NCBI RefSeq assembly: GCF_032444005.1
Contig: NC_091283.1
Span: 43,028,001 to 43,092,000 of the forward strand
Direction of reading: 5' to 3'
DNA from: Ranitomeya imitator
Taxonomy: Eukaryota
DNA length: 64,000 bases
Part shown: positions 34,639-55,653 of the stretch, piece after piece
Numbering within the stretch: position 1 is the first letter of the stretch
Layout of the letters: every line of letters begins with the position of its first letter
Notes under the pieces: model-generated
Database searches by the model: none
Told to the model about the DNA's origin: nothing
Seen by the model: the letters and a program-made list of their open reading frames with translations, nothing else
Translations under genes and position numbers: made by a program

Positions 34639-34684
34639 ATGGGACCTGTGAAGTGTTTACTGCTTGCAGCTGTCTGCTTGCAAG
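34639..34684 (+). CDS. ccer2: Granin-family secreted Glu-rich protein (CCER2 position, chromogranin-A-like), exon 1 of 6 (gene 34639-53612, 356 aa)
   Basis: MGPVKCLLLAAVCLQ signal peptide; 46 nt, donor G|GTAAGA; TATA-like tatatat ~34498. Confidence 0.8.
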
Positions 34685-35189
34685 GTAAGAACTGCAGTCT
34701 GCCAAGTGCAATGTCCTCTGTCAGGGGAAGACCCCTCCACCTCCAAGGTGAGACCTGGATCTGCAGTAATACATGACCAGACTGGTATTACCAGTTATTA
34801 ATGCATGATGCTAAAAAAAATCCATTTACATTCCAAATATGTGATCTCCGTATAAGTGTAATCCTTCGAGGATATGTTTCCTATTCATAGATTTGGTTGT
34901 AGGTCATCAATTATACATGATCTATTCCAGATAACGGTATTATCATCCCTGGGGTTATTGCCTGCGTTCCCTGGTAATTAGGTTATTTCCATAAAATCCT
35001 ATATAAGGTGAAATGATGCAATTAATATAATATATTGCTGTACATAAGGGGTCTGCTGAGAGTTACATCAAGCACATTAATAATTACGGTGCCCACAAGT
35101 TCATATTGACTCCTGGTGACCATGCCATGTTCTTATTCTTTATGTTTGCCTCCATACTTCTTGTTCCCGATTCTTTATTTATTTCCCCT

Positions 35190-35558
35190 TTCAAAAACGA
35201 TCCATCACTTACCATAAATATGTATTTTATTAACCCGGTGTAAACGCCGCTGTTCTCCTGAATCCGGCGATGTTTTTCTTTTTTTCCTGCGCCTCTCCGT
35301 TCCTGAGATATGGCCTCCTCTTCCTTGTGTAGAAATCTAGTCTTGTTTTCCAAGTGGGCGTGATGCTCCGTTCTTCTCGGAGGATCACACCCAGTTGGAT
35401 AAAAAGACTAGATTTACATAAGGGAAAGAAGAGGCCATATCTCAGGAACGGAGAGGCCCAGGAAAAAAAGAAAAACATCGCCGGATTCAGGAGAACAGCG
35501 GCGTTTACACCAGATTAAAAATCGGCATATTTTTGGTAAGTGATAGATCCCCTTTAAG
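35190..35558. mobile_element. Palindromic T2-type MITE
   Basis: Mirrored arms gtaaacgccgctgttctcctgaatccggcgatg / catcgccggattcaggagaacagcggcgtttac; ends ...gatcccctTTAA. Confidence 0.8.
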
Positions 35559-35766
35559 TCTCCGTGCTTTCTTATAAGTCGGGTCTTTAAGAAGTAAAAG
35601 ATAAAGGTCTAATCTGGTCAGTTCTAAAAAAAATTCTGGATGATGAGGTCAAGGTTCTTCTCCATCATTGATTTGATCTCCAGAGAGGTCACTACCATAG
35701 AGCCTTGTAGAAGCCCCAGAAGTGTCATCGATATTGAAGAATTAATCTTTCTGTTTCGTTCTTTAG

Positions 35767-35813
35767 TTTCCACCATGCCCCTGTCCAGCCAGCTGTCCGA
35801 AGAAGAAGAAAAG
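35767..35813 (+). CDS. ccer2: ccer2/granin exon 2
   Basis: (V)STMPLSSQLSEEEEK|GTgagc, 47 nt. Confidence 0.82.
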
Positions 35814-36316
35814 GTGAGCGTTATGGATACATATCTATATCCATTATTTGGTAACACATGACTTACTCATTTATTATATGTGTAAAATATGAACACCGTC
35901 TGTCACAATACTTTACATGTAATATATCATACCTGTCACATTAAACGTGGCATCTAATTTGTGGGCAGCAGGAGATAGAGCAGGAGGAGCTGAGCAGATC
36001 GATATATAGGTTTGTAGGAAAAGATTCAGTTTAACTTGTAATAAATTCACTTAAATCTATGAACTTTATAAGCTCAGGAGTCCAGTGGGAGGTCTCAGTC
36101 ACTGAATAGGACCGCCCACTGGACACTTGAGCACAGAAAGATCATGGATTTAAGTGATTGTATTACCAGTTATACTTAATCTTATATACAAAAAATATAT
36201 ATCAATCTTCTCAGCTCTTCCTGCTCTATAAGTCTGTGTTCACACGTCAGTTTTTCTTTCCAGTTTTATGATACTTTTTAGGAGAAATAAAGAGTTCCCA
36301 TACTGGACCCCACCTA

Positions 36317-37967
36317 CAGTTAGGGCCAGAAATATTTGGACAGTGACACAAGTTTTGTTATTTTAGCTGTTTACAAAAACATGTTCAGAAATACAATTAT
36401 ATATATAATATGGGCTGAAAGTGCACACTCCCAGCTGCAATATGATAGTTTCCACATCCAAATCGGAGAAGGGGTTTAGGAATCATAGCTCTGTAATGCA
36501 TAGCGTCCTCTTTTTCAAGGGACCAAAAGTAATTGGACAATGGACTCTAAGGGCTGCAATTAACTCTGAAGGCGTCTCCCTCGTTAACCTGTAATCAATG
36601 AAGTAGTTAAAAGGTCAGGGGTGGATTCCAGGTGTGTGGTTTTGCATTTGGAAGCTGTTGCTGTGAGCAGACAACATGCGGTCAAAGGAACTCTCAATTG
36701 AGGTGAAGCAGAACATCCTGAGGCTGAAAAAAAAGAAAAATCCATCAGAGAGATAGCAGACATGCTTGGAGTAGCAAAATCAACAGTTGGGTACATTCTG
36801 AGAAACAAGGAATTGACTGGTGAGCTTGGGAACTCAAAAAGGCCTGGGCGTCCACGGATGACAACAGTGGTGGATGATCGCCGCATACTTAATTTGGTGA
36901 AGAAGAACCCATTCACAACATCAACTGAAGTCCAGAACACTCTCAGTGAAGTAGGTGTATCTGTCTCTAAGTCAACAGTAAAGAGAAGACTCCATGACAG
37001 TAAATACAAAGGGTTCACATCTAGATGCAAACCATTCATCAATACCAAAAATAGACAGGCCAGAGTTAAATGTGCAGAAAAACACCTCAAGAAGCCAGCT
37101 CAGTTCTGGAAAAGTATTCTATGGACAGATGAGACAAAGATCAACCTGTACCAGAATGATGGGAAGACAAAAGTTTGGAGAAGAAAGGGAACGGCACATG
37201 ATCCAAGGCACACCACATCCTCTGTAAAACATGGTGGAGGCAACGTGATGGCATGGGCATGCATGGCTTTCAATGGCACTGGGTCACTTGTGTTTATTGA
37301 TGACATAAGAGCAGACAAGAGTAGCCGGATGAATTCTGAAGTGTACCGGGATATACTTTCAGCCCAGATTCAGCCAAATGCTGCAAAGTTGATTGGACGG
37401 CGCTTCATAGTACAGATGGACAATGACCCCAAGCATACAGCCAAAGCTACCCAGGAGTTCATGAGTGCCAAAAAGTGGAACATTCTGCAATGGCCAAGTC
37501 AATCTCCAGATCTAAACCCAATTGAGCATGCATTTCACTTGCTCAAATCCAGACTTAAGACGGAAAGACCCACAAACAAGCAAGACCTGAAGGCTGCGGC
37601 TGTAAAGGCCTGGCAAAGCATTAAGAAGGAGGAAACCCAGCGTTTGGTGATGTCCATGGGTTCCACACTTAAGGCAGTGATTGCCTCCAAAGGATTTGCA
37701 ACAAAATATTGAAAATAAAAATATTTTGTTTGGGTTATGTTTATTTGTCCAATTACTTTTGACCTCCTAAAATGTGGAGTGTTTGTAAAGAAATGTGTAC
37801 AATTCCTACATTTTCTATCAGATATTTTTGTTCAACCCTTCAAATTAAACGTTACAATCTGCACTTGAATTCTGTTGTAGAGGTTTCATTTCAAATCCAA
37901 TGTGGTGGCATGCAGAGCCCAACTCGCGAAAATTGTGTCACTGTCCAAATATTTCTGGCCCTAACCG
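36317..37967 (+). mobile_element. Full-length Tc1 element (1651 bp)
   Basis: TA|cagttagggccagaaatatttggacagtgacac ... gtgtcactgtccaaatatttctggccctaaccg|TA. Confidence 0.93.
36676..37712 (+). pseudogene. Tc1 transposase (DD34E) with one 1-nt frameshift near the N-terminus
   Basis: ATG 36676 MRSKELSIEVKQNILRL; A-run at 36727-36740 is one A short; open from there to KGFATKY* (track ORF 36762-37712); WTDETK, MDNDPKH, DLNPIEH intact. Confidence 0.85.
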
Positions 37968-38766
37968 TATTAAATGGATTTCATCTTTCTAAAATGTCAT
38001 CATTTTGCATCCGTTCTATCTGATATTTTTTTTTGGGATGGACAAAAAAAAAGCTCATAGTCTGCAAAACTCTTTTTTTCCATCCACAAAAACAGGCGAC
38101 TGAACGGAGGCTTCCATTATTTTACAATAAAAGGAATCTGACAGCAGGATTTCATCACCCCCAAAACTATTTATATCGCTCTTTCATAGACATGTCCAGC
38201 AATACCTTCACATGGCCGGTCCGTTCCTTCATTACTGAGAAATGAGTGTTTGAATTGATATGCAAATGAGGCTGAAGGGCTCTGGTAGATCTGAATCCTC
38301 TGCCACTCCAGCTCTATGTCCCGCTCAGAGCCGCCTCCTCCTGCTTGACTGACAGCTTTTGTTCTGTGTGACATCAGGCAAAGGAGCTGTCAGTCAAGAA
38401 GGACAAGATGGCGCCAGGCAGGGACTAGAGCTAGAGTGACCGTTCTGCACATGCCCAGAATGATAGAGATCTTCATAGATCCCTCTAGTAAACACGAATC
38501 TGTTCAAAACAGAACAAAAATAGACGGGCCGGACACAAACCGGAAACTAAAGTCTCCATTTGGTATCCATTTTTATTTGTATATTTTGTCAAAATCTGAA
38601 AAAAAAAATTAAAAATTTAACCTTATGGCAAATTGATTTACAAGTACCCCCAATTGATCTAAAAAGATGTATGCAACACTCTGAATACTCCTAGGACTGT
38701 ATCCATCTCCTTACAAGCTCTTTACTGCAAGCACAGCCTTAGTGACGTCAAAGTGACCAAAACGTA

Positions 38767-40395
38767 TATGTGGGAACGGAAATTATTCAGACCCCTTTAA
38801 TTTTTTCACGCTTTTTCATTGCAGCCATTTGGTAAATTCCAAAAAGTTCATTTTTTTCTCATTAATGTACACTCTGCCCCCATTTTGACTGAAAAAAAAC
38901 AGAAATGTAGTAATTTTTGCAAATTTATTAAAAAAGAAAAACTGAAATATCCCATGGTCATAAGTATTCAGACCCTTTGCTCAGACACTCATATGTAAGT
39001 CACATGCTGTCCATTTCCTTGCGATCCTCCTTGAGATGGTTCTACTCCTTCATTGGAGTCCAGCTGTGTGTAATTAAACTGATAGGACTTGATTTGGAAA
39101 GGCGCACACCTGTCTATATAGAGGCTCACAGCTCACAGTGCATGTCAGACCAAATGAGGATCATGAGGTCAAAGGAACTGGCCAAGGAGCTCAGAGACAG
39201 AATTGTGGCAAGGCACAGATCTGGCCAAGGTTACAACACAATGTCTGCAGTACTCAAGGTTCCTAAGAGCACAGTGGCCTCCATAATCCTTAAATGGAAG
39301 AAGTTTGGGACCACCAGAAGTCTTCCTAGACCTGGCCATCCAGCCAAACTGAGTAATCATGGGAGAAGAGCCTTGGTGAGAGAGGTAAAGAAGAACCCCA
39401 AGATCCCTGTGGCTGAGCTCCAGAGAAGCAGTAGGGAGATGGGAGAAAGTTCCACAAAGTCACCTATCACTGCAGCCCTCTGCCAGTCGGGCCTTTATGG
39501 CAGCGTGGCCCAACGGAAGCCTCTCCTCAGTGCAAGACATTTGAAAGCCGCATAGAGTTTGCTAAAAAACACATGAAGGACTCACAGACTATGAGAAATA
39601 AGATTCTCTGGTCTGATGAAACAAAGATAGACCTTTTTGGTGATAATTCTAAGCGGTATGTGGGGAGAAAACCAGGCAATGCTCATCACCTGCCCAATAC
39701 AATCCCAACAGTGAAGCATGGTGGTGGCAGCATCATGCTATGGGGGTGTATTTCAGCTTCAGGGACAGGACGACTGGTTGCAATTGAAGGAAATATGAAT
39801 GCGGCCAAGTACAGAGATATCATGGATGAAAACCTCTTCCAGAGTGCTCTGGACCTCAGACTTGGCCGAAGGTTCCCCTTCCAACAAGACAATGACCCTA
39901 AGCGCACAGCTAAAATAAGAAAGGAGCGGCTTCAGAACAACTGTGTGACCATTCTTGACTGGCCCAGCCAGAGCCCTGACCTAAACCCAATTGAGCATCT
40001 CTGGAGAGACCTGAAAATGGCTGTCCACCAACGTTCACCATCCAACCTGACGGAACTGGAGAGGATCAGCAAGTAAGAATGGCAGAGGATCCCCAAATCC
40101 AGGTGTGAAAAACTTGTTCCATCATTCCCAAGAAGACTCATGGCTGTACTAGCTCCAAAGGGGCTTCTACTCAATACTGAGCAAAGGGGCTGAATACTTA
40201 GGACCATGTGATATTTCACTTTTTTTTTTAATAAATTTGCTAAAATTACTACATTTCTGGTTTTTTTTCAGTCAAGATGGGGTGCAGCGTGTACATTAAT
40301 GGGAAAAAAATGAACTTTTTTTAATTTACTAAATGGCTGCAATGAAACAAAAAGTGAAAAATTTAAAGGGGTACGAATACTTTCCATACCCACTG
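38767..40395 (+). mobile_element. Degenerate IR/DR-type Tc1 element
   Basis: ~220-bp inverted ends; transposase from 39163 (MRSKELAKELRDRIV) broken near 39555 and by a stop at 40074-40076; WSDETK, QQDNDPK, DLNPIEH. Confidence 0.9.
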
Positions 40396-41839
40396 TGTGT
40401 ATATATATATGGTGGTAACAAACAGTCTGTTCCTCAGACACTTATCTTCTTCTACCCTGCTGAGCTGTCAAACATCATCTGTACAGTTTATTCACTATCC
40501 AGATTCACCCTACAATAGCTTCTACATTCCCTGCCTTGGCTTTTATACAGGCTACCATAGTCTCTCCTGATTGCCTGTGCTGTACCACGTGATGTGATAT
40601 CTGCAAAGTCTTATGATAAAGTCTTGAGTTCATGTGAGCTTTCTCTAGCTGAGACAATCTTCTGCTTTGTGTAAAATGTCGTTTGCCATTTTTGGCAGGA
40701 CTTGTACATTACTACAGTCAATTTCAGGATGGGGACTCACAAAAGTCAGCGCAGTCTTCTTCTCTACCGACCCTGTCCATCTTTTCCATTTATAATATAC
40801 ATTATCTAGCTTGGCTGACCTGCAATACCAGATACAACCTGCAGATGGATGTGGCGCTGTTTTGAGAATAAATCACCTTTTTCTAATACCTTTTTAATGA
40901 CTGTTAGGATCCAGAATACTTTATCTCTGCCGTTCTGCTGTTTGTTTTGCCCTGAGTCGCTCTCACTTATCATGTTACGGAAGGGGATTGTCACAATCGA
41001 AATAAAGCCGTCGAGCTCATTGAAATCAAACAAAAGGTCGCTGTTCAATATTATCGACAAGCTGAACTCCCCGCGTCGAAGCGACAAGTTTTACAGCTGC
41101 TTAATTAGTAACTAAATCCTCCCGCAGACAGCAAACGGTGGTAGTACATGAGATATCGACAGAAGGGCTGCCGGGACGAGAGCTCGTTAACTGAGCGGAG
41201 ATTGTGGCTCCAGTAGATTAGAATTGGTTTTCTATGGTATATTGGTTACACTTCCGCTATTACATAGCTGCATAGTTAAAGGAGTTGTCCATGGATAGCT
41301 TTTTTCCTTAGAAACAGCGCCACTCTTGTGAGTAGGTTGTGCCTGGTATTGCAATTTTGACTGATTCACTTAGATAGGGATTAGCTGTAATACCAGAAAC
41401 AGCCTGTAAACAAAAGTGGCAGCAAATCTGCCGTTACATACTATTTGAACTGTTTCTTCAATGTTTTATGGCTTTTTCTCCCTAGCTCTATGACTAAGCT
41501 GTGAAGTGTGACGTCATCTCACTATCCAGATTCACCCCACATTTTGGCATTATAGAGGTAGTCCCTTATTATGGACCCACGACTATTACCAGAGCCCCCT
41601 CTATAGACAAGACATTTTAATGTCATTCCATACTGTGTAGTTAGATATTAATGATTTTATGTTATTCTGTCGAAAAATAGGTTTTATATTGAGGAGCTTT
41701 TCCTTGTGCTCATTGTCGCCCCCTGTAGAGGTAAGGGGTGAAGAAAAATTACAATTGTTCTTCATTAGTGACTTTTGGCTTTTTTTAAAGCCATTCAGAG
41801 GAATTTTTACTGTTTTTATTATATTAAAAGTGAGAGCCT

Positions 41840-42225: not shown

Positions 42226-42355
42226 AAACCAGCCTGTGCAACAAAGAATATGTTGTACAAATAATTACTCTTCATGGAGCTCAATATGGAACTAGAGTCG
42301 ATACATAAGCCCCAGATTACTTTTCTGGATTAATTATACCTTTCTGTTCCTCCAG

Positions 42356-42449
42356 GTCACTAGATGTATCATGGAGGTCCTGGCAGAGTCGTTGACTTCA
42401 CCTGGGCCAGAACGGGTCAGCAGCGGCTGCATCCGAATACTCAAAGAAG
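42356..42449 (+). CDS. ccer2: ccer2/granin exon 3 (Cys-loop domain)
   Basis: VTRCIMEVLAESLTSPGPERVSSGCIRILKE, 94 nt; two Cys spaced as in the chromogranin disulfide loop. Confidence 0.9.
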
Positions 42450-42819
42450 GTTGGGAGCCATCTTTTATTATCCATGGTCTCCACTTGCCCAAATCCTTGT
42501 TCCTTGTTTCCCTATTCTTTCCCACTCGCCTTCAGACTCTATTAGTAATGTTCTTCTATTGTAAGCTTCCCAGAGATCTGCATGGCCCCCACCCACCACG
42601 GGCCATTACTAACAATCATACCTAGCTATCTTGTATGGGAGAATTGGTCCTTCTCAGCAGCCAGACCTGGGTACGATAGCTGCACCCCTGATATTTCCAG
42701 AAATGTATGATCTTTTTGGGGTAAACTGTTCCTTTAGGGAATTATCATATTATTCTATAGAAAGATGTGGGGGGGTTTATGGACCTTCTGTTAAAGTAAG
42801 GATGTTTGGGCTTTTGCAG

Positions 42820-42888
42820 ATGAGCGTCTGATCGCCATGTTGCGGCACCAACATATGCTCAGAGAACTGGAGGATCTGACTCAGCGAG
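42820..42888 (+). CDS. ccer2: ccer2/granin exon 4
   Basis: (D)ERLIAMLRHQHMLRELEDLTQR, 69 nt; compare CHGA DERILSILRHQNLLKELQDLALQ. Confidence 0.88.
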
Positions 42889-43025
42889 GTAACTGATGAT
42901 ATAGCAAAAAGGGGCAGAAAAAGTATGAAAAAAATGATGGCAGAAAATTCTTCTGCAAATTATTAAAATGACGGCGGGTCACATCATTCTAGAAAGTAGG
43001 AATTTATACCAGGCTTAGATCTTAA

Positions 43026-43425
43026 AGGGAATTTGTCAGCAGGTTTTTGCTATTAAATCTGAGAGCAGCATAATATAGATCAAGTGAGCCCGATTCCAGG
43101 GATGTGTCACTTATTTGGATGTGTGTTGTACAATCAGTGTTTTACTATTATCACTGCTAGACTAGGTTTCACGTGCACAGTAGTCAGGCTAATCTGTGTA
43201 ACCCCGCCCCCACCACTGATTGGCAGCTTGCCAACAGTGTACACGGGAAGCTTCCAATCATGAGTGAGGGCGGGGTTACACTGCCTTAACATTCTATTCG
43301 CTGACACATTTACAACAGAGAAAGCAGGGATTCTATCAAAACTGCACCAAGCAGTCCAGCAAGTGACATATCGCTGGAATAAGGCCCCACACATATATAT
43401 ATATACGGCTGCTGACAGATTCCCT
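43026..43425. mobile_element. T2/Kolobok-type MITE
   Basis: TTAA|agggaatttgtcagcag ... ctgctgacagattccct|TTAA. Confidence 0.85.
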
Positions 43426-46040
43426 TTAAATTTTACATATTGATAGGTTAGGAAAACTAAGTCAAGTATGGCCGATGAGACGGCAACACCGCAGAAGCTA
43501 TTTTTATGGCTTAGTGTATTATGTTAGGATTGTCCAACTTTTGGGACAATTTTATTTAACTTTTTTTTACTTAAATGTGTGTGTTTGAAGCTAAAAAAAA
43601 CAAACATTTTTTTCAATTGGATTTCATTAAAAATGTTATCTTCTATAGCCTTTATGTAATATTGTCTATTGCTGGCTGGAGAATGAGTTAACTGACATTC
43701 CATCAGTGAGCTCATTCTTATGATCTTATGGTAGCGTTTTTTAACTTTTTTTTGCTTTTCTCTGAGTTCCTCTCAGTGTATTTTATGACCACAGTCCACA
43801 TCAAAGTTGGATATTGCTGTTGGCTTTTGTATACCATCACATTCAACTTTCCCGTGATCATAAATCAGTTGAGAGGAGCTCGGTAAAACAAAGGTAAAAG
43901 CGCTATAAACTCTCTCATCGGACCGTCAGAACGAGCTCACTGATGCATTCCCAGTTAGCTCATCCTGCAGCCAGCAATTCAATAGCTTTAAAAAGAAATA
44001 GTGCAACAATATTAATGAAACCCAACTGCAAACATTATTTTAGCCCCAAGTACATGCATTTAAGCACAAATAAAAATATGTTCACAAAGGTGAATATCCC
44101 TTTTAAATAACATTTATTGGAGAGCGCAGCAGCAGATGTCTGACCTAAAAGGGGTTGTCTAGGGTAAAAAAAAAAATCCAATTTGATATAATTTGCTAGA
44201 TAATTCTGAGTTAATAGTGTTGGGTTTGATCCTCGTCTCATGACCAGAATTGTTACAGCGAGTGTCTTTGCCTCTGGAGGACCCGTCCTGTCCGCCATTA
44301 CACAGGGCACACATAGACTTGAATATACACTGTGTAATGTTTCATTTGGCCACCGGAGGTGCTGCAGGGAAATGAAAAACTTACAATTAGCTGTTTTCAC
44401 AAAAGCCAAAGCTGGAGAAGACTTTGTTGTCTCCTTAAAGGGATCCTTCTAACACCTACAAATTTACCTAAGTGGAAAACCCCTTTGATTGCTGCCATTA
44501 TTTAAAGGGATCTCATATTTGCTTCTCCTTCATTCGCGGCTCTGTTCTTCGTCCCCTGCACTTTGTAATGTTTATTTTTCCAGTGGCCTATGATGTGTGT
44601 TATTTCACTCTACTACACTTTATAGCGCCCACACCAGACCGTAAGGTGAACTGTCTGTACTGTGTTCTGTTTTATGAGTCTGGTCCGTCCCTGTAACTGC
44701 TCCTTATCTACATCACACCCTTATCTGTTTACCTTGCCCTATTCTTCTCCTTTCCCAGCCTGGACACCGCCCTTTTCACTTTGTCCTTCACTTTAAACAC
44801 TTGATTCTCCGAACCTATGTAACAGCGTCTTCCCGCTCCCTTGGAAAAAAATTTTTTACGTTCATCACAACAAACTTTTTCTGATGATTGGTCTATGGTT
44901 AATTGGGTTCTGATAATGTCATCTGGACCAGGCATTGTTAACCCCCCCCAAAAAATGGATATAAATTTATGCCAGCAAAGAAAACCCCTCCATAAAACTA
45001 TTTCCCCGACCCCTAAAAGACATAAGGAGGAGAAGGGAGAAGAAGAGATGAGCGGATTTTCTAAAATTCATTTTGGCCCAAAAATTCTAGCAGACAAAAT
45101 CAAAGCCTCTAATTGCCACAAATGTGTAACACTCTGAGGTCTCCTAGGACTGAAACCAAACCCTTTAAAGCTCTTTAACGCATAGACAGTAATAGTAATG
45201 TCAAAGTGACCTAAACATATTCACTTTCCACCCTTAGACATCAGGTAACCTCCCATATCCAATGAAATCGGTAGGTTTGGGTAGCAACAAGTACCATTGG
45301 ATTGTCTTCTCCTGGACTTTTGGGGTACATTATTGCGTCTTGGCCAAGCGGAAGAACCTCTAGCATGCTGGCGGGCCAGTCTAGGCCTACAGCCATGTGG
45401 TGACATTATCAGGTCAACTGAGGGTGGACATAACACTGGGGCAAAGATGTAAGGGGGCCCACTTTCATCTCCAGAAGCGGTAAGTAGCTTCTTCCACAGA
45501 CACATTTTTGGACTGTTGTGTTTTTGCACTGTGGTCCTCTTCTGTCTGTGTCCACTCCTGAGATCAACTATATTTTTGCACATATCCTATGACCTGATCA
45601 ATGATGACTTCCCTATTTCTCCTGTTGCTTTAGTACTATTGACTGTTACCTTCTTGTCCGAATTAATTCTAAACCCATTTATCATTATTTCCCTCCCGTT
45701 TGTCATCTCCTTCCTAATTACTATGTCAACACTTCCACTTCTCGACTCTTCTCGACAGAACACATGGGGTTAAAACAAACTTTTATGTTCCCCAATATTG
45801 AGGCTTCATGCATGAAGTGTAGAACCACAGGCATCTTGTATGGTCCATGTGTAGACAAATCGTTGGTTTTCTTTCCATTTATAATCCATTTATAGTCATC
45901 AAGGTTCTGCCTCACACCCCAACGTTGGCACATAGTTGGGTATATCGGAATTGATATCACAATTTCTTGACATCAGTCAAGATTTTTTTCACGTGAGTTT
46001 TGCGAAACTAAACTTTTTTTTGCATTAATTGTGCCCATAG

Positions 46041-46780
46041 AAAAGTCGCATCTCCATGCAGAAAGAGACACTATGGAAGAAGAAGAACTTAAAAAGAGAG
46101 CCAATGAGCCTCCAGTTCCTCCATCCAAAAAAGCCGAGGAGTCAAAAAGGGGATCTTCAAGTGAGGAATCCAAAGAGTTTGAGAAAATAGAGAAGGTGCA
46201 TGTGAAAGAGAAGGAACATGGGGAACATGGTGGCACTTCTGCTGAGGACAAGGTTAACGAGCTGCTGGAAGAAGAGGAAAAAAGGAATGCCCAAAATAAG
46301 AGAAGTGGAGATATGATGAAAAAAGATGGAAAAGAAGTCAAGAGTGACATGGCTGCCAGAAAAGATAAAAAACACTTTAGCGACGAGAGTGATGAAGAAA
46401 ACTCAGAGGAACATGAGCATGAGAGGGGCTACCATGGGAACAAAGATGGGTGGTACCACAGGAACCATGAAGGATGGGAAGAAAGAAAAAGGGTGGCAGA
46501 AGACCCCAGTCAGGAAGAAACAGCCCAGTTTGAGTCTGAAGACCGAGGCTTGAAATACTTCAACGCCAAAACCCATATGCATGGCTATCATGGGGAAGAC
46601 AAGAGGCATATCCACCACCCAGAAGAAGGCGAAATGGAAAGGGAGAGGTCCTATTATGACCAAGGGGAAGGTGAGATGGGAAGAGAGAGGCATCATTATA
46701 ATGGAAACCATGACCACAGAGAGGAAGAAGAGGAGAGGGAGTTGGAGGAGATGGAAGAACGTGAAGAACACAGGGCTAAG
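46041..46780 (+). CDS. ccer2: ccer2/granin exon 5 (large acidic exon)
   Basis: 740 nt, phase 1 to phase 0; Glu-rich with many KR/KK/RK sites; RKRVAEDPSQEETAQFESEDRG matches the recalled CCER2 motif [21 protein letters not shown]; donor GTAAGA at 46781. Confidence 0.9.
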
Positions 46781-47214
46781 GTAAGAAGAGGAGGACATTC
46801 ATCTCATGATGACATCACTAGGTTGTATTGTCCAATGTTTATGGTTGCCACTATCCCAATAAACCACTGTCCCATAACCAATTGCCATTTACACTGGCAG
46901 GCTAGTGCAAGTAGAAAAGATTGTATTGTCCAATGGCGAGTACTGATATTTTTGATTACCAGTGGAGTGAAGTAATTGTTAATTGATATTCTGAATTTCT
47001 GATCTGACTCTCCTGCTTTGCCAGACCGGCCAGTCCTGGGTATTTCAGCAGCGTCAGGACTAAGTCAAGAGTGGGAGCGGCGGTGGTGAGAGTTTGCAGA
47101 GAGCCAGAGACAATAATATCCAGCAACTGTGAATGTGTTCCTTGCCAACATGGCTGCACAACCCCAAAGTCAGAGCTTAGATCAGAGGAGAAGTACCTGA
47201 ATTACAGAGAGTTA

Positions 47215-47431
47215 GGGTATGTGTCCACGTTCAGGATTGCATCAGGATTTGGTCAGGATTTTATGTCAGTATTTGTAAGCCAAAACCAGGAGTGGGTGAT
47301 AAATGCAGAAGTGGTGCATATGTTTCTATTATACTTTTCCTCTATTTGTTCCACTCCTGGTTTTGGCTTACAAATACTGACATAAAATCCTGACCAAATC
47401 CTGATGCAATCCTGAACGTGGACACATACCC
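47215..47431. mobile_element. PIF/Harbinger-type palindromic MITE
   Basis: TTA|gggtatgtgtccacgttcagg ... cctgaacgtggacacataccc|TTA; near-perfect palindrome. Confidence 0.85.
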
Positions 47432-48519
47432 TTAATGTCTGACTCACTCCAAGGATGCCCATAAGCTCGGCCCATTGTCTATTCAGTAGAGTAAGGGGAG
47501 TAAAAGTCACCTCCAGACCCCTCTTGCGGCGGCTAAGAAAGAACAAAAGGATCGAGCATTGAAGGCCAACATGTCCGATCCTTCTTCCCCTCAAAATCAT
47601 CTAAGAATATTTGGGAGTCCCCCCCAAAGCCGTCTGGTTTAGCTACAATTGATCAGTTTGGCTTACTTTGCTCCAACGTGTTGGAACAGCACAAACTTTT
47701 TTTAAATTTTTATTTTCTTAATAATTTTGTCCAGCATGGAAAGTTAAGAAAATTTGCAAATCACTTTATTTGGGAATTTGTCTTAACCCCTGTAGGAGCA
47801 TGAGTACGTTCTGATATCAATGAAGCTGAAGACCGGAAAATAGACTGGAGAAAAGCGGGGAGTGCAAGACAAGTACATGCAATATTTTGTTTTTACAGGA
47901 AAGAGCGCAAATCCCCTAATAAAGTGATTTGCAAAGTTTCATAAGTTTCCATCCCAAACAAAATAATACAAAAAAAACCTATCCTGTTTTTTTTTTTAGT
48001 AAAAAGTTCTGGTAACCCTAGACACGATGGGCGACACCTACTCTGTAGTATAATGGTGATTAATATGGGGAATAGATTACTGTGTGATTTATACTGTATT
48101 TGCGCTTTTTTTTTCACATTTATAATCTAAAAGAGTAGATAATTAGAAATACTACTCTCTAGAGCAGAGGTGTCACACTCAAGGCCAGTGGGCCGAAACC
48201 GACCTGCCATGTCATTCTCTGTGGCCCGCGAGGTCAGGACACAGAAGGACGGGCTTTCCACTTTCTCCTGTATGGAGAGCCGGTCAGAGCAGTGTTGAAG
48301 TCTGCGCTGTAACTCAAAATCTAAGATGGCAGCCATGTCCTGTGCCGGCTATGCCCTCATCCACTAAGTACTGGCTGCCTTCTACATTGACACAGCCAAT
48401 GTCTAGCAAAGGCTTGGAGGCAGCTGGCACAGGGGGCTTATGCGATGCAGCCAGCAGTAAAAAGATGGGTGGCACCAGCACAACGAGTAGGTGTCATCTT
48501 TGTGAGTGATCAATGCATG

Positions 48520-51200
48520 TAGTGATAGCAGTCAGCCAGAACAAACAGTGATAATAGACAGTAATAGCAGTCAGCCAGCACAAATGGTGAATGCGGTGAT
48601 AGCAGTCAGCCAACACAAATGGTAATCATAGTGATAGCAGTCAGCCTGCACAAACTGTGATCGTAGTGATAGCAGTCAGCCAGCACAAACGGGGAATGTG
48701 GTGATAGCAGTCAGCCAGCACAAACGGGGAATGTGGTGATAGCAGTCAGCCAGCACAAACGGTGATCGTAGTGATAGCAGTCAGCCTACACAAATGGTGA
48801 ATGCGGTGATAGCAGACAGCTAGCGCAAATGGTGGTCGTAGTGATAGCAGTTAGCCAGCACAAAAGGTGAACATGGTGATATCAGTCAGCCAGCACAAAC
48901 GGTGATCGTAGTGATAGCAGTCAGCTTGCACAAACGGTGATTGTGGTGATAGCAGTCAGCCTGCACAAACGGTGATCGTAGTGATAGCAGTCAGCCTGCA
49001 CAAACGGTGATTGTGGTGATAGCAGTCAGCCTGCACAAACGGTGATCGTAGTGATAGCAGTCAGCCTGCACAAACGGTGATTGTGGTGATAGCAGTCAGC
49101 CTGCACAAACGGTGATCGTAGTGATAGCAGTCAGCCTGCACAAACGGTGATTGTGGTGATAGCAGTCAGCCTGCACAAACGGTGATCATAGTGATAGCAG
49201 TCAGCCAGCACAAACGGTGATCGTAGTGATAGCAGTCAGCCAGCACAAACGGTGATCGTAGTAATAGCAGTCAGCCTGCACAAATGGTGAATGCGGTGAT
49301 AGCAGTCAGCCTGCACAAACGGTGATCGTAGTAATAGCAGTCAGCTTGCACAAACAGTGATTGTGGTGATAGCAGTCAGCCTGCACAAATGGTGATCATA
49401 GTAATAGAAGTCAGCCAGCACAAATGGTGATCGTAGTGATAGCAGTCAGCCAGCACAAACGGTGATCGTAGTGATAGCAGTCAGCCAGCACAAATGGTGA
49501 TCGTAGTGATAGCAGTCAGCCTGCACAATCGGTGAATGTGGTGATAGCAGTCAGCCAGCACAAACGGTGATCGTAGTGATAGCAGTCAGCCAGCACAAAG
49601 GGTGATCGTAGTGATAGCAGTCAGCCAGCACAAAGGGTGAACATGATGATAGCAGTCAGCCTGCACAAACGGTGATCGTAGTGATAGCAGTCAGCCAGCA
49701 CAAAGGGTGAACATGGTGATAGCAGTCAGCCTGCACAAACGGTGATCGTAGTGATAGAAGTCAGCCTGCACAAATGGTGACTGTGGTGATAGCAGTCAGC
49801 CAGCACAAATGGTGATCGTAGTGATAGCAGTCAGCCAGCACAAACGGTGATCGTAGTGATAGTAGTCAGCCAGCACAAATGGTGATCGCAGTGCTAGCAG
49901 TCAGCCAGCACAAATGGTGATCGTAGTGATAGCAGTCAGCCTGCACAAACGGTGAATGTGGTGATAGCAGTCAGCCAGCACAAATGGTAATTGTAGTGAT
50001 AGCAGTCAGCCAGCACAAATGATAATCGTAGTGATAGCAGTCAGCCTGCACAAACGGTGATCGTAGTGATAGCAGTCAGCTAGCACAAAGGGTGAACATG
50101 TTGATAGCAGTCAGCCTGCACAAATGGTGATCGTAGTGATAGCAGTCAGCCAGCACAAAGGGTGATCGTAGTGATAGCAGTCAGCCAGCACAAATGATAA
50201 TCGTAGTGATAGCAGTCAGCCAGCACAAATGGTAATCGCAGTGATAGTAGTCAGCCAGCACAAATGGTGATCGCAGTGCTAGCAGTCAGCCAGCACAAAT
50301 GGTGATCGTAGTGATAGCAGTCAGCCTGCACAAACGGTGAATGTGGTGATAGCAGTCAGCCTGCACAAACGGTGATCGTAGTGATAGCAGTCAGCCAGCA
50401 CAAATGGTAATTGTAGTGATAGCAGTCAGCCAGCACAAATGATAATCGTAGTGATAGCAGTCAGCCAGCACAAAGGGTGAACATGGTGATAGCAGTCAGC
50501 CTGCATAAACGGTGATCGTAGTGATAGCAGTCAGCCAGCACAAAGGGTGAACATGGTGATAGCAGTCAGCCTGCACAAATGGTGATCGTAGTGATAGCAG
50601 TCAGCCAGCACAAACGGTGATCATAGTGATAGCAGTCAGCCAGCACAAAGGGTGATCGTAGTGATAGCAGTCAGCCAGCACAAAGGGTGAACATGGTGAT
50701 AGCAGTCAGCCTGCACAAACGGTGATCATAGTGATAGAACTCAGCCTGCACAAATGGTGAATGTGGTGATAGCAGTCAGCCTGCACAAATGGTGATCGTA
50801 GTGATAGCAGTCAGCAACACAAAGGGTGATCGTAGTGATAGCAGTCAGCCAGCACAAAGGGTGAACATGGTGATAGCAGTCAGCCAGCACAAAGGGTGAA
50901 CATGGTGATAGCAGTCAGCCAGCACAAATGGTGATCGTAGTGATAGCAGTCAGCCTGCACAAACGGTGAATGTGGTGATAGCAGTCAGCCAGCACAAATG
51001 GTAATTGTAGTGATAGCAGTCAGCCAGCACAAATGATAATCGCAGTGATAGTAGTCAGCCAGCACAAATGGTGATCGCAGTGCTAGCAGGCAGCCTGCAC
51101 AAACAGTGATCGCAACTAGTCAGCCAGCACAAACGGTAATCAAAGTGATACCAGTCAGACAGCACAAACGGTGAACGCAGTGATAGCAGTCAGCCTGCAC
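48520..51200. repeat. 35-bp minisatellite, ~75 copies
   Basis: gtgatagcagtcagccagcacaaacggtgatcgta; alternating 70-bp higher-order run at 48900-49190. Confidence 0.95.
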
Positions 51201-51284
51201 TTTTGTGTGGTTCTATCTTTGACTCAAAGCAGATGCAGCCAGTACTTAGCATAGGGAACAGTCCATCTGGGACTGAGGTCTGGA

Positions 51285-52790
51285 ACAGCTCTCTTAGCCC
51301 TACCACCCAAGGACAGCTCTCTTAGCCTTACTATACAGGGACAGCTCTCTTATAGCTCTACTACCCAGGCACAGCTCGCTTATGCCTACTACCCAGGGAC
51401 AACTTTCTTAGCCCTACTACCCAGGGACAGTGAGCTTAGCCCTACTACCCAAGGCAACTCTCTTATAGCTCTAGGCACAGCTTTCTTATAGCCCTACTTC
51501 CCAGGGACAGATCTCTTAGGCTACGTTCACATTGGCGTTCCGCCAATGTGCGTCGCTGTTGCGTCGGCGACGCAGCGGCGACGCGCCCCTATGTTTAACA
51601 TAGGGGACGCGTGCGTTTTTTTGGTGGCGTTTTTCGACACGTGCGTCGTTTCCGACGCTAGCGTCGGACGCAAGAAAATGCAACAAGTTGCATTTTTTGT
51701 GCGTCCGATTTTCGTCAAAAAACGACGCACGCGTCGCAAAACGCAGCGTTTTTGCGCGCGTTTTTTGTGCGTCGTGCGTTGCGTCGCCGACGCACCGGCG
51801 CGCAACGCTAATGTGAACGTAGCCTTATTCCTACTACCCAGGGCCAGTTCTCTTAGCCCCACTACCCAGAGACAGCTCTCTTAGCCCCACTACCCAGGGA
51901 CAGCTCTCTTAGCCCCACTACCCATGGACAGCTCTCTTAGCCCTACTACCCAGGGACAGCTCTCTTAGCCCTACTAACCAGGGACAGCTCTCTTAGCCCC
52001 ACTAACCAGGGACAGCTCTCTTAGCCCACTACCCAGGGACAGCTCTCTTAGCCCTACTAACCAGGGACAGCTCTCTTATCCCCACTACCCAGGGACAGCT
52101 CTCTTAGCCCTACTACCCAGGGACAGCTCTCTTAGCCCCACTAACCAGGGACAGCTCTCTTAGCCCCACTAACCAGGGACAGCTCTCTTAGCCCCACTAC
52201 CCAGGGACAGCTCTCTTAGCCCCACTAACCAGGGACAGCTCTCTTAGCCCCACTAACCAGGGACAGCTCTCTTATCCCCACTACCCAGGGACAGCTCTCT
52301 TAGCCCCACTACCCGGGGACAGCTCTCTTAGCCCCACTACCCAGGGACAGCTCTCTTAGCCCCACTACCCAGGGACAGCTCTCTTAGCCCCACTACCCAG
52401 GGACAGCTCTCTTAGCCCCACTACCCAGGGACAGCTCTCTTAGCCCTACTAACCAGGGACAGCTCTCTTATCCCCACTACCCAGGGACAGCTCTCTTAGC
52501 CCCACTAACCAGGGACAGCTCTCTTAGCCCTACTAACCAGGGACAGCTCTCTTATCCCCACTACCCAGGGACAGCTCTCTTAGCCCTACTACCCAGGGAC
52601 AGCTCTTAGCCCCACTACCCAGGGACAGCTCTTAGCCCCACTACCCAGGGACAGCTCTCTTAGCCCCACTATCCAGAAACTGCTCTCTTATTCCCACTAC
52701 CCAGGGACAGCTCTCTTATCCTTACTACCTAGAAACTGCTCTCTTATCCCTACTACCCAGAGACAGCTCTCTTATAGCCACTGGCCAGTC
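51285..52790. repeat. 28-bp minisatellite, ~40 copies
   Basis: ttagccccactacccagggacagctctc. Confidence 0.95.
51519..51824. mobile_element. CpG-rich PIF/Harbinger-type MITE inserted in the 28-bp array
   Basis: TTA|ggctacgttcacatt ... aatgtgaacgtagcc|TTA. Confidence 0.88.
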
Positions 52791-53537
52791 AGTGCATTGC
52801 ATGAGCCCTTACAATTACAACTGGAATTTCCAAGGCAACCATAACATGGATGTGACCCTTGGTGAAAATGAGTTTGACATCGCTGCTCTAGAGGATCTGT
52901 TCTCCTTGTGAGTTTAGGTTTATTACAGGGCCATGATAAAAGTAATATCATTGCTGGTATATTTGTGTGTGTTTGCTATCATCCTGTTTTATGACGGATG
53001 GACTTTAGTAATTTTACCGTAATAAGAACACTGACACCAATAAAACCACTTATCACAGACACTTTGTCCTCTGAATTCTAAACTCTACAGTCAGCTAGCT
53101 ACAGATTAGGAGAGCGTAGGTGCCAATACACATTAGTGTAACTGATGCCGGGGTGAAAGAAGGATCGGGCATAATATGACTGCTTGATTCCTTAGTTCTC
53201 AGGGGAGATAAGCTGCTATCAGAGCTGTCCGGCAGCGTTTTATACCTTTTGCCTCCCAGCTGGCCTGAGCATTAGGGGAATAACTGTCGGTCAAGTGGAC
53301 AATTAGGGTTAAGCTTTATCATTGTGGCCATGTTCTATGTACTATGTTCGGGTAGGGACCTAATGGGATGAGGTCGCCGTGATTCTGTCAGGCATTTGTT
53401 TTTGGGTAGATCTGAATTCGATGTTCAAACGTGAATAAAGTCTAATAGATGTAAAAAAAATATTGTAAAAAGTTGTTTTTTTTAACATGTAAAATCTAAT
53501 TAATGCTGTTCATTTATATTTTGTGTGTGTGTTTAAG

Positions 53538-53612
53538 GAAAGGGACTTCCATCAGGTGGAGGAAGAGCTAAGAAAGGCGGCAGAACGACTGCAAGAACTT
53601 CACCGGGGTTAA
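53538..53612 (+). CDS. ccer2: ccer2/granin exon 6 (last coding)
   Basis: ERDFHQVEEELRKAAERLQELHRG*; compare the CHGA C-terminus IEAELEKVAHQLQALRRG*. Confidence 0.88.
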   Translation, partial: ERDFHQVEEELRKAAERLQELHRG

Positions 53613-54541: not shown

Positions 54542-54648
54542 CTAAAAATGAAGGGATTTATGGAATTCAAACCCTTAGATGGATGGAAATTACTTATATA
54601 TAGGGGATTCAGAATGTCTCTTATGGATGGAGTGCAAGAATAACTAAC

Positions 54649-55585: not shown

Positions 55586-55653
55586 TTGAGACAGGTGTGA
55601 ACAGGACTCTGCTTTGGAGACCTGATGGCTGTTAAAGTAGATTGTCGATTGGT
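55586..55653 (-). CDS. itpk1: ITPK1-like exon
   Basis: (D)QSTIYFNSHQVSKAESCSHLSQ, 68 nt. Confidence 0.92.

What the first reader, a model, noticed from the sequence alone, without database searches (positions are those of the whole stretch)
34639..53612. The gene at the CCER2 position is a recognisable chromogranin A paralog
Seen: coding exons of 46, 47, 94 and 69 nt with phases 1/0/1/1, a signal peptide, the Cys-loop VTRCIMEVL...SGCIRILKE, DERLIAMLRHQHMLRELEDL, a large acidic exon and a C-terminal ...LQELHRG*. Established (recalled): human CHGA begins with 46/47/94/69-nt coding exons, has DERILSILRHQNLLKELQDL and ends LRRG; human CCER2 lies just downstream of SARS2 on the same strand and has the KRVAE...ETAQF motif. 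Inference: the poorly characterised CCER2 is a degenerated CHGA paralog, and the frog copy keeps the ancestral granin features, including the exon-4 segment.
Basis: partly seen in the sequence, partly recalled or inferred. Interest (0 to 1): 0.72.

Follow-up and report, generated by a model that had tools for sequence, protein, structure and literature searches.

The report
Frog CCER2 is a third chromogranin
The gene just downstream of SARS2 in this frog is the ortholog of the uncharacterised human gene CCER2, and it still carries the hallmarks of chromogranin A, which makes CCER2 an ancient sister gene of the chromogranins that has decayed in mammals.

Summary
A six-exon gene (34639-53612, + strand) has coding exons of 46/47/94/69/740/72 nt plus the stop, with phases 1/0/1/1/0. 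Spliced contigs in four public runs from four studies support four of these junctions.

The 356-aa product has:
- a signal-like N-terminus;
- a C-x20-C loop;
- the helix DERLIAMLRHQHMLRELEDL;
- an acidic, largely disordered core;
- a granin-type C-terminus.

- **Orthology to CCER2.** The order MRPS12 / SARS2 -> gene matches opossum SARS2 -> CCER2. The motif KRVAE..S.EETAQFE is shared from sharks to whales.
- **Not a moved chga.** CHGA, CHGB and CCER2 form three separate clades. An AU test rejects placing the frog genes with CHGA (p=0.006). Xenopus has its own CHGA. Sharks, coelacanth, salamander, turtles and lizards each carry both genes.
- **Shared gene structure.** Chicken CHGA and shark and frog CCER2 share the 47/94/69-nt exons and their phases. 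Both lie tail to tail with an ITPK1-type gene.
- **Decay in mammals.** Opossum keeps a 51-nt remnant of exon 4. A whale has lost that exon.

No paper in the searched library links CCER2 to granins, although database annotations hint at it. The granule function is inferred, not shown.

The parts
34639..34684 (+). CCER2 coding exon 1 (46 nt, ends in phase 1): start codon and hydrophobic signal-like peptide MGPVKCLLLAAVCLQ
   Evidence: Read directly. tblastn of D. tinctorius CCER2 P0001. Donor is GTAAG. The cleavage site was not predicted with a dedicated tool.
35767..35813 (+). Coding exon 2 (47 nt, phase 1 to 0): VSTMPLSSQLSEEEEK, the start of the mature protein
   Evidence: It is the only 47-nt AG..GT candidate that also has a pyrimidine tract and matches P0001. 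The overhang of the RNA contigs matches 35782-35811. The length is the same in shark CCER2, chicken CHGA and the lamprey granin.
42356..42449 (+). Coding exon 3 (94 nt, phase 0 to 1): granin disulfide loop, VTRCIMEVLAESLTSPGPERVSSGCIRILKE (C-x20-C)
   Evidence: The 94-nt exon and its phase are the same in chicken CHGA, frog CHGB and shark CCER2. A profile of this loop finds 128 proteins among 1.84 billion. Those given a name or checked by motif are CHGA, CHGB, CCER2 or the lamprey granin; one weak repeated match looked unrelated and many short fragments went unclassified.
42820..42888 (+). Coding exon 4 (69 nt, phase 1 to 1): helix DERLIAMLRHQHMLRELEDLTQR, the CHGA-type segment
   Evidence: It matches the PDB 6r2x chromogranin-A peptide. 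Joints on both sides appear in four RNA-derived runs. AlphaFold2 predicts a helix at residues 55-107 with block-mean pLDDT mostly 86-93. CHGB has no such exon.
46041..46780 (+). Coding exon 5 (740 nt, phase 1 to 0): acidic core of the protein (22% Glu over the whole product). It holds 13 dibasic positions, S-x-E sites and the conserved block KRVAEDPSQEETAQFESEDRGLK
   Evidence: (93% identity to D. tinctorius CCER2). Fully covered by contigs in four runs. Mostly pLDDT below 50 in the model.
53538..53612 (+). Coding exon 6 (72 nt plus stop, phase 0): C-terminal helix ERDFHQVEEELRKAAERLQELHRG*, the granin C-terminal motif
   Evidence: The RNA contig overhang matches 53543-53572. It is homologous to the phase-0 last exon of CHGA and CHGB (81-84 nt). 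pLDDT is 94-96.
34470..34506 (+). Possible core promoter: a TGACG half-site (34470-34474) and TATATAT (about 34499-34506), some 130 nt upstream of the ATG
   Evidence: Seen in the sequence only. The region is 95% identical to D. tinctorius, which is too close a relative to show constraint. This is inference and was not tested.
4343..4762 (-). Neighbour: MRPS12 coding exon
   Evidence: Pfam Ribosom_S12_S23, E=9.6e-29.
8243..19146 (+). Neighbour: SARS2 (mitochondrial seryl-tRNA synthetase). The first coding ORF is at 8243-8497. One exon ends at 19146. The true 3' end lies further downstream and was not mapped
   Evidence: The ORF at 8243 has a mitochondrial presequence-like start. The best PDB matches of 18787-19146 are mitochondrial Ser-tRNA ligases, E about 5e-6. 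There is a weak tRNA-synt_2b hit at 19585-19920.
54647..56183 (-). Neighbour: 3' exons of an ITPK1-like gene, convergent with CCER2
   Evidence: Pfam Ins134_P3_kin, E=6e-9 and 4e-17. The same convergent neighbour sits beside D. tinctorius CCER2, beside shark CCER2 and beside chicken CHGA.

Best explanation
The gene at 34639-53612 is the frog ortholog of CCER2. CCER2 is a third chromogranin-type granin that arose, together with CHGA and CHGB, by duplication of one ancestral granin locus before the jawed vertebrates diverged, most likely as part of a larger duplicated block.

Shown here:
- The gene is transcribed and spliced as predicted.
- It encodes a signal-like N-terminus, the granin C-x20-C loop, the CHGA-type helix, a long acidic and mostly disordered core, and the granin C-terminal helix.
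- Its exon lengths and phases match CHGA.
- It shares a convergent ITPK1-type neighbour with CHGA.
- It is orthologous to mammalian CCER2, in which the loop is shortened and the helix exon is truncated (opossum) or lost (whale).

Inferred from what is established for CHGA and CHGB (cited from memory, not checked here):
- The protein enters the secretory pathway and is sorted to dense-core granules through its N-terminal loop and helix.
- It aggregates with Ca2+ at acidic pH.
- It is phosphorylated at S-x-E sites.
- It is cut at dibasic sites, which would release among others the conserved peptide that follows KR at residues 235-236.

The confidence given is for homology, orthology and paralogy. 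I put the granule and prohormone function at about 0.6.
For: **Gene model and RNA:**

**Family membership:**
- Pfam Granin hits of 20-32 bits on frog orthologs, where the cut-off is 25.
- hhalign against CHGA E=6.7e-38, end to end; against CHGB E=7.9e-16.
- A profile of the Cys loop finds 128 proteins among 1.84 billion. Those named or checked by motif are CHGA, CHGB (secretogranin-1), CCER2 (including mammalian CCER2 at 4e-4 to 9e-4) and one lamprey granin.

**Exon structure:**
- frog and shark CCER2: 46/47/94/69/big/75-84
- chicken CHGA: 43/47/94/69/.../84
- frog CHGB: 52/44/94/big/84
- phases are identical at every shared intron position

**Tree:** three clades. The window gene sits inside the frog CCER2 clade (100/99). 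An AU test rejects union with CHGA.

**Synteny:**
- MRPS12 / SARS2 -> CCER2 in the window, and SARS2 -> CCER2 in opossum.
- A convergent Ins134_P3_kin gene lies next to frog and shark CCER2 and next to chicken CHGA.

**Both genes in one species:** Pristis, Chiloscyllium, Latimeria, Ambystoma, Pelodiscus, Carettochelys, Pangshura, Anolis.

**Structure model:** helices at the two ends with a disordered core.

**Context from mammals:**
- CCER2 marks Merkel cell carcinoma, a neuroendocrine tumour (PMC12623243, PMC9974098).
- It marks cochlear hair cells (PMC7221106).
- It is measured in plasma (PMC13088631).
Against: - No localisation, secretion or processing data exist for CCER2 in any species that I could find, so the function rests on homology alone.
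- The Pfam score of the closest ortholog of this frog's gene (D. tinctorius P0001, 93% identical over exon 5) is below the curated cut-off (20 against 25 bits).
- The tree uses only 94 columns. The CCER2 branch is not starred (94/91), the mammalian CCER2 branch is long, and the lamprey sequence is unplaced.
- Which pair among CHGA, CHGB and CCER2 are sisters is not settled. The 69-nt helix exon favours CHGA+CCER2 and the single large middle exon favours CHGB+CCER2.
- A separate chga gene was shown for Xenopus, not for this frog.
- The runs used are only presumed to be RNA. Splicing proves that the joined contigs come from RNA, but the tissues are unknown.
Confidence: 0.88

Rival explanations
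1. The gene is the frog's true chga, moved next to SARS2, and frogs have no other chga.
For: The N-terminal 90 residues are very CHGA-like (hhalign E=6.7e-38). Some databases name orthologs 'chromogranin-A-like' or 'Chromogranin A'.
Against: - The frog genes sit in the CCER2 clade, and union with CHGA is rejected (p-AU 0.006).
- Xenopus tropicalis has a separate CHGA.
- Discoglossus has this gene and CHGB.
- Salamander, coelacanth, sharks, turtles and lizards have both CHGA and the CCER2 type.
- The SARS2 linkage is shared with opossum CCER2.
- The gene has one large middle exon where CHGA has three.
Confidence: 0.01
2. The gene is a real CHGA relative, but the non-mammal 'CCER2' and the mammalian CCER2 are different paralogs (hidden paralogy), so nothing follows for the human gene.
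For: Mammalian CCER2 is very divergent: a long branch, odd composition in opossum, and only E=2e-8 to 4e-4 in the sequence search.
Against: - Frog and opossum share the same position and strand downstream of SARS2.
- Opossum has the same six-exon plan with identical phases.
- The central block KRVAE.ASDEETAQFE.EEKG is nearly identical from shark to whale.
- hhalign gives E=1e-18 over the full length.
- The mammalian loop hits the granin loop profile.
Confidence: 0.03
3. Homology is right, but CCER2 no longer works as a granule matrix protein or prohormone. It may be a constitutively secreted or otherwise repurposed acidic protein, at least in mammals.
For: - Mammals shortened the loop and lost the helix.
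- The literature describes CCER2 only as a marker gene and a plasma analyte.
- Hair cells, a main site of expression, are not classical dense-core-granule cells (my own knowledge, not tested here).
Against: - In non-mammals the loop, the helix, the central block and the C-terminus are conserved over more than 400 million years.
- Expression in Merkel cell carcinoma and small-cell lung cancer fits neuroendocrine granule cargo.
Confidence: 0.3
4. CCER2 arose from CHGA by a local or segmental duplication in an early jawed vertebrate, not through the two rounds of whole-genome duplication.
For: Only one flanking gene family (ITPK1-type) was shown to be duplicated along with it. CHGA and CCER2 share the 69-nt exon, which the lamprey gene and CHGB lack as a separate exon.
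Against: From my own knowledge, not tested here: human 14q, 19q13 and 20p hold many paralog pairs and triplets (FOXA1/2/3, AKT1/2, NFKBIA/B), which fits a block from whole-genome duplication. The gene is already present in sharks and rays.
Confidence: 0.15

Closest known systems
Chromogranin A (CHGA)
   Same: - Signal peptide.
- A 47-nt exon 2, a 94-nt C-x20-C loop exon and a 69-nt helix exon (DERI.SILRHQNLLKELQ), all with identical phases.
- An acidic, disordered core with dibasic sites.
- A phase-0 last exon that encodes the ...ELE.L..IE.EL..VA.KL..LRRG motif.
- A convergent ITPK1-type neighbour.

   Different: - It forms a separate clade.
- It has one large middle exon where CHGA has three.
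- No recognisable pancreastatin or WE-14 sequence was seen in the alignment. Instead it has its own conserved block, KRVAE..S.EETAQFE, which aligns only with moderate confidence to the WE-14/catestatin boundary of CHGA.
- It is linked to SARS2.
Chromogranin B / secretogranin-1 (CHGB)
   Same: - The loop exon is 94 nt and begins VTRCI.EVL, closer in wording to CCER2 than to CHGA.
- A single large middle exon.
- An 84-nt phase-0 C-terminal exon.

   Different: - CHGB lacks the helix segment and its exon.
- It is about twice as long.
- The profile match is weaker: E=7.9e-16 against 6.7e-38 for CHGA.
[quoted passage not shown]
   Same: - Position and strand downstream of SARS2.
- Exon phases.
- Loop cysteines.
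- The central KRVAE.ASDEETAQFE block.
- The C-terminal helix ending in G.

   Different: - Mammalian proteins are shorter (257-279 aa for the three compared).
- The loop is two residues shorter (88-nt exon) and exon 2 is shorter.
- The helix exon is cut to 51 nt in opossum and absent in a whale.
- The ITPK1-like neighbour is replaced by an ankyrin-repeat gene, by position NFKBIB.
- No Pfam Granin hit is on record for them.
Lamprey granin LOC116947327 (P0285/P0301)
   Same: Loop, helix-like segment DNRISTLIHQHDLLSQLEEIAG and C-terminal motif. Exons of 47 nt, 97 nt and 81 nt with the same phases.
   Different: The helix is fused to the large exon, with no intron after it. Its place in the tree is unresolved (88/67 with CHGB, on a long branch).

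Membership tests
Granin family, chromogranin type (Pfam PF01271) | Match to the curated family profile above its cut-off | tested here: inconclusive
   D. tinctorius ortholog 20.0 bits and E. coqui 20.9 bits (cut-off 25). Pseudophryne 27.6, Discoglossus 30.5 and Spea 32.2 pass. Profile-profile comparison against CHGA gives E=6.7e-38.
Granin family, chromogranin type (Pfam PF01271) | N-terminal disulfide loop C-x20-C on a 94-nt exon entered in phase 0 and left in phase 1 | tested here: met
   42356-42449. The length and phase are the same in chicken CHGA, frog CHGB and shark CCER2. A loop profile search of 1.84 billion proteins finds 128 proteins, and those named or checked are family members. 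The disulfide bond itself was not shown.
Granin family, chromogranin type (Pfam PF01271) | Conserved C-terminal motif on a separate last exon entered in phase 0 | tested here: met
   53538-53612. It aligns to the CHGA and CHGB C-termini. The last exon is 75-90 nt and phase 0 in all eight genes mapped.
Granin family, chromogranin type (Pfam PF01271) | Signal peptide, acidic composition, multiple dibasic sites | tested here: met
   Hydrophobic N-terminus. 21.6% Glu, pI 5.3, 13 dibasic positions and 9 S-x-E sites. No signal-peptide predictor was available.
Granin family, chromogranin type (Pfam PF01271) | Storage in dense-core secretory granules, Ca2+/low-pH aggregation, regulated release | not testable with these tools
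   Only indirect evidence: the mammalian ortholog marks neuroendocrine tumours and is found in plasma.
CHGA orthologs | Groups within the CHGA clade | tested here: not met
   CHGA is a starred clade without it (99/90). An AU test rejects union (p=0.006).
CHGA orthologs | Eight coding exons, with the acidic region split into three (99/510/455 nt in chicken) | tested here: not met
   One 740-nt exon takes the place of the three.
CCER2 orthologs | Lies immediately downstream of SARS2 on the same strand | tested here: met
   In the window: MRPS12(-), SARS2(+), then the gene(+). In opossum: SARS2(+), then CCER2(+).
CCER2 orthologs | Central block KRVAE.ASDEETAQFE.EEKG | tested here: met
   KRVAEDPSQEETAQFESEDRG starts at 46487. 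R237, E240, S243, E245, E246, T247, Q249, F250 and E251 are invariant from shark to frog, and the block is present in opossum and whale.
CCER2 orthologs | Groups with mammalian CCER2 in a tree | tested here: met
   All 18 CCER2 rows fall on one side of a branch, 94/91, not starred. hhalign E=1e-18.

The most novel reading that the evidence does not exclude
CCER2 is a working third chromogranin in vertebrates. It would be a granule-sorted prohormone of ATOH1-lineage sensory and neuroendocrine cells (Merkel cells, hair cells). Its deeply conserved central peptide follows a KR site and is positionally equivalent to the WE-14/catestatin region of CHGA. That peptide would be an undescribed secreted signalling peptide, and the human gene would be a reduced but still active version.
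Probability: 0.3. Interest if true: 0.8.

Novelty: new member of a known kind. Interest (0 to 1): 0.62.

Why it matters
CCER2 is a human gene with no known function. It is now used as a marker of Merkel cell carcinoma and of inner-ear hair cells, and it is measured in large plasma-proteomics studies.

Placing it as a sister of chromogranins A and B gives it a concrete, testable biology: granule sorting, regulated secretion and peptide processing. It would add a member to the granin family as I recall it listed in reviews (from memory, not checked here).

It also supplies a well-defined duplicated block (granin plus ITPK1-type gene) for reconstructing early vertebrate genome duplications. Frogs, sharks or lizards would be better systems than mammals for studying the protein, because they keep all the ancestral modules.

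One caveat: automated annotation already carries the hint, through Pfam hits and names such as 'chromogranin-A-like' on some orthologs. The step from database to stated finding is therefore small, and I could not check Ensembl or PANTHER family assignments.

Tried and rejected
- **Short exons against Pfam.** The first call failed on a frame error. The large exon alone hits no family.
- **PDB sequence search.** The whole protein matches only the 25-residue CgA peptide 6r2x, so no solved relative was available for a fold comparison. I did not run fold searches because the model is mostly disordered (mean pLDDT 58).
- **Xenopus CHGA locus.** The exact-sequence look-up found no record. Frog CHGA exon structure and its neighbours therefore went unchecked, and chicken CHGA was used instead.
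- **A seventh exon.** I looked for the exon implied by 'six junctions'. None is needed: exon 5 ends in phase 0 and joins exon 6 directly, as in P0001 and in the RNA contigs.
- **Promoter conservation.** The comparison with D. tinctorius is uninformative at 95% identity.
- **Literature.** CCER2+granin gave 0 papers. CCER2+chromogranin gave 5, all co-mentions as markers. CCER2+secretogranin gave 1, incidental. Chromogranin+secretogranin+ohnolog gave 0. Granin family+genome duplication gave 5, all on teleosts.
- **Birds, crocodilians and ray-finned fishes.** No CCER2-type sequence from these groups appeared among the hits. The listings are capped and clustered, so I do not claim loss.
- **Tree of ITPK1 against the ITPK1-like neighbours.** Not attempted, because only 3' fragments of four genes were in hand.
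- **Rules kept.** The masked N runs (7195-7347, 15876-16208) were left alone. No human contig was fetched. Read laying was given 4,501 letters.


Full report
**1. What is in the window**

Between 34639 and 53612 on the + strand lie six coding exons with canonical AG/GT borders:
- 34639-34684 (46 nt)
- 35767-35813 (47 nt)
- 42356-42449 (94 nt)
- 42820-42888 (69 nt)
- 46041-46780 (740 nt)
- 53538-53612 (72 nt plus TAA)

The end phases are 1, 0, 1, 1, 0. The joined CDS is 1071 nt and gives a 356-aa protein. tblastn with the best database relative reproduces the same six pieces.

There are five, because exon 5 ends in phase 0 and joins the last exon directly.

**2. It is expressed and spliced as predicted**

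I laid contigs of four public runs from four studies on 42300-46800.
- In each run, one contig of 1.0-1.6 kb skips 42450-42819 and 42889-46040. Both gaps are GT..AG.
- The contig parts that hang over the ends match exon 2 (35782-35811) and exon 6 (53543-53572).
- This supports four of the five junctions. Junction 1-2 was not seen directly, but the overhang of 80-121 nt is longer than exon 2.
- The runs are only guessed to be RNA. The intron-less contigs show that they hold RNA-derived sequence. The tissues are unknown.

**3. Identity**

The large exon alone finds 19 proteins. The best is 'coiled-coil domain-containing glutamate-rich protein 2' (CCER2) of Dendrobates tinctorius, at 93% identity, so the window comes from a related poison frog.

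A profile of 16 frog sequences (A1) reaches a wider set:
- proteins that NCBI names CCER2 in salamanders, caecilians, turtles, squamates and coelacanth;
- 'chromogranin-A-like' or unnamed proteins in a sawfish and a bamboo shark;
- mammalian CCER2: opossum at 2.4e-8 and whales at about 1e-4.

Many of the non-mammal proteins already carry a precomputed Pfam Granin hit. In my own scan the frog proteins score 20-32 bits against a cut-off of 25.

**4. Neighbours**

In the window the order is:
- MRPS12 (-, 4343-4762, Pfam S12 E=1e-28);
- SARS2 (+, from 8243; the best PDB matches are mitochondrial Ser-tRNA ligases);
- the granin gene (+);
- an ITPK1-like gene on the - strand (Pfam Ins134_P3_kin, E=6e-9 and 4e-17).

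In opossum the order is SARS2(+), CCER2(+), an ankyrin-repeat gene (-, by position NFKBIB) and a SIR2-domain gene. A whale contig shows CCER2 followed by the same ankyrin gene. The SARS2 -> CCER2 linkage is therefore shared by frog and mammal.

The convergent ITPK1-type neighbour is also found next to D. tinctorius CCER2, next to shark CCER2 and, importantly, next to chicken CHGA.

**5. Gene structure across the family**

I mapped proteins exactly onto their loci.

| Gene | Coding exon lengths (nt) |
|---|---|
| Window CCER2 | 46/47/94/69/740/75 |
| D. tinctorius CCER2 | 49/47/94/69/740/75 |
| Bamboo shark CCER2 type | 46/47/94/69/860/84 |
| Opossum CCER2 | 55/29/88/51/536/81 |
| Grey whale CCER2 | 73/41/88/503/90 |
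| Chicken CHGA | 43/47/94/69/99/510/455/84 |
| Frog (Discoglossus) CHGB | 52/44/94/1724/84 |
| Lamprey granin | 61/47/97/1376/81 |

- Phases are identical at every shared intron position in all eight genes.
- CCER2 shares the separate 69-nt helix exon with CHGA.
- It shares the single large middle exon with CHGB and the lamprey gene.
- CHGB has no helix at all. Lamprey has a helix-like segment, but it is fused to the large exon.
- In mammals the CCER2 loop exon lost 6 nt, exon 2 shrank, and the helix exon is a 51-nt remnant in opossum and absent in the whale.

**6. Family-wide search and tree**

A 43-column profile of the loop region (A2, built from CCER2 and CHGA) was scored against 1.84 billion representative proteins. 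It found 128 proteins at E<=1e-3.

By motif and by name look-ups, the full-length hits and all those looked up are:
- CHGA, including Xenopus tropicalis NP_001007915, axolotl, coelacanth, elephant shark and many ray-finned fishes;
- CHGB/secretogranin-1, including two frogs, a newt, mammals, a bird and a ray;
- CCER2, including cat at 4e-4 and two further mammalian fragments;
- one lamprey protein.

One weak repeated match looked unrelated. Many short fragments went unclassified.

A tree was built on 94 columns (loop, helix and last exon) for 47 sequences.
- CHGA (99/90), CHGB (98/91) and CCER2 (94/91) each fall on one side of a branch.
- The window gene lies inside the frog CCER2 group (100/99) and the amphibian group (97/92).
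- Forcing the frog genes together with CHGA costs 20.6 log-likelihood units and is rejected (p-AU 0.006).

Eight species have both CHGA and the CCER2 type: Pristis, Chiloscyllium, Latimeria, Ambystoma, Pelodiscus, Carettochelys, Pangshura and Anolis. The split therefore predates the jawed-vertebrate crown.

Profile-profile scores:

| Comparison | E-value |
|---|---|
| CCER2 vs CHGA | 6.7e-38 (end to end) |
| CCER2 vs CHGB | 7.9e-16 |
| CHGA vs CHGB | 1.2e-13 |
| Non-mammal vs mammal CCER2 | 1e-18 |

The root, and therefore which two of the three are sisters, is not settled. The shared 69-nt exon and the scores favour CHGA+CCER2.

**7. The protein**

Composition and sites: 21.6% Glu, pI 5.3, 13 dibasic positions and nine S-x-E sites.

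Conservation from shark to whale is concentrated in four blocks:
- residues 22-40 (N-terminus and first Cys);
- residues 59-66 (second Cys to DER);
- residues 238-253 (VAEDPSQEETAQFESE, which follows KR);
- residues 349-356 (C-terminus).

AlphaFold2 on the D. tinctorius ortholog gives mean pLDDT 58. It predicts confident helices at 55-107 and 308-356, and 174 residues score below 50. In short, the ends are structured and the core is disordered.

In a relaxed global profile alignment, the central block falls opposite the CHGA stretch that spans the end of WE-14 and the start of catestatin (..KR.EE..SEEDPDRSMK..), with moderate column confidence. This is a lead, not a result.

**8. How it most likely works**

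By homology with CHGA and CHGB, and drawing on established knowledge of those proteins that I am citing from memory:
- The signal peptide takes the protein into the ER.
- The disulfide loop and the adjacent helix direct it to the regulated pathway.
- The acidic core binds Ca2+ and aggregates in the trans-Golgi.
- Prohormone convertases cut at the dibasic sites.

None of this was tested here, and nothing of the kind was found in the literature for CCER2.

Supporting context from mammals:
- CCER2 is an established Merkel cell carcinoma marker (PMC12623243). [quoted passage not shown]
- It is hair-cell specific in mouse cochlea (PMC7221106).
- It is detectable in plasma (PMC13088631).

**9. Novelty**

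Among 95 papers in the library that mention CCER2, none also mentions granins. The five that mention chromogranin do so only as a co-listed marker. No paper on granin evolution in the library names a third chromogranin-type gene.

Public annotation already contains the hint, through Pfam hits and names such as 'chromogranin-A-like' or 'Chromogranin A' on some orthologs. I could not consult Ensembl or PANTHER families. I therefore rate this as a new member of a known kind: well supported at the level of homology and untested at the level of function.

**10. Limits**

- The tree is short.
- The mammalian and lamprey branches are long.
- chga was not looked for in this frog's own genome.
- The CHGA exon comparison used chicken rather than a frog or human.
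- The tissues of the RNA runs are unknown.
- The promoter elements listed are pattern matches only.

Noticed in passing
L006:10001-18120 (Petromyzon marinus, protein P0285/P0301): A lamprey protein named 'ABC transporter F family member 4-like' or left uncharacterised is a chromogranin-type granin. It has the loop, a helix-like segment and the C-terminal motif. Its exons are 61/47/97/1376/81 nt with the family's phases, and the helix is not on its own exon.
   Followed up: partly
L004:10001-11868 and L007:2491-4712: Step-wise decay of CCER2 in mammals. Opossum keeps a 51-nt remnant of the helix exon. The grey whale has five coding exons and no helix exon. In both, the loop exon is 88 nt instead of 94.
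   Followed up: yes
window 54647-56183 (-); L001:39206-48500; L003:36385-40352; L002:27462-29634: An ITPK1-type gene (Ins134_P3_kin) lies tail to tail with CCER2 in frog and shark and with CHGA in chicken. In opossum and whale an ankyrin-repeat gene (by position NFKBIB) holds that place instead, so the CCER2-linked ITPK1 paralog seems to be missing there.
   Followed up: partly
window 46487-46600 (protein residues 235-273): The most conserved part of CCER2 outside the two ends is a peptide bounded by KR sites (VAEDPSQEETAQFESEDRGLKYFNAKTHMHGYHGED). A relaxed profile alignment puts it opposite the WE-14/catestatin boundary of CHGA.
   Followed up: partly
window 36762-37712 (+) and 38977-40076 (+): Two Tc1/mariner-type transposon copies sit in intron 2 of CCER2. 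The first has an uninterrupted 316-aa ORF with HTH_Tnp_Tc3_2 and DDE_3 domains. The second is broken into pieces.
   Followed up: partly
window 33395-34203: An imperfect simple repeat of about 800 bp, rich in CA/TG, lies a few hundred bases upstream of the CCER2 start. It gives long spurious ORFs on both strands.
   Followed up: no
window 16458-17443 and 20916-21689: Two blocks of short tandem repeats within the SARS2 span give proline- or glycine-rich ORFs on both strands. They look like intronic repeats, not genes.
   Followed up: no
proteins P0042, P0043, P0089, P0027: Several database names look wrong. Two snake CCER2 orthologs are called 'cilia- and flagella-associated protein 251'. A turtle CHGA is called '6.8 kDa mitochondrial proteolipid'. 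The Anolis sagrei CCER2-type protein is called 'chromogranin-A isoform X1'.
   Followed up: no
(family-wide hit lists): No CCER2-type sequence from birds, crocodilians, ray-finned fishes or Xenopus appeared, although CHGA and CHGB from birds and CHGA from ray-finned fishes did. This could mean lineage losses, but the lists are capped and clustered.
   Followed up: no
window 34404-34506: Upstream of the start there are two E-boxes (CACCTG at about 34404 and CAGATG at about 34449), a TGACG half-site and a TATA-like box. This is of interest because mammalian CCER2 marks ATOH1-lineage cells and CHGA is CRE-driven, but these are pattern matches only.
   Followed up: no
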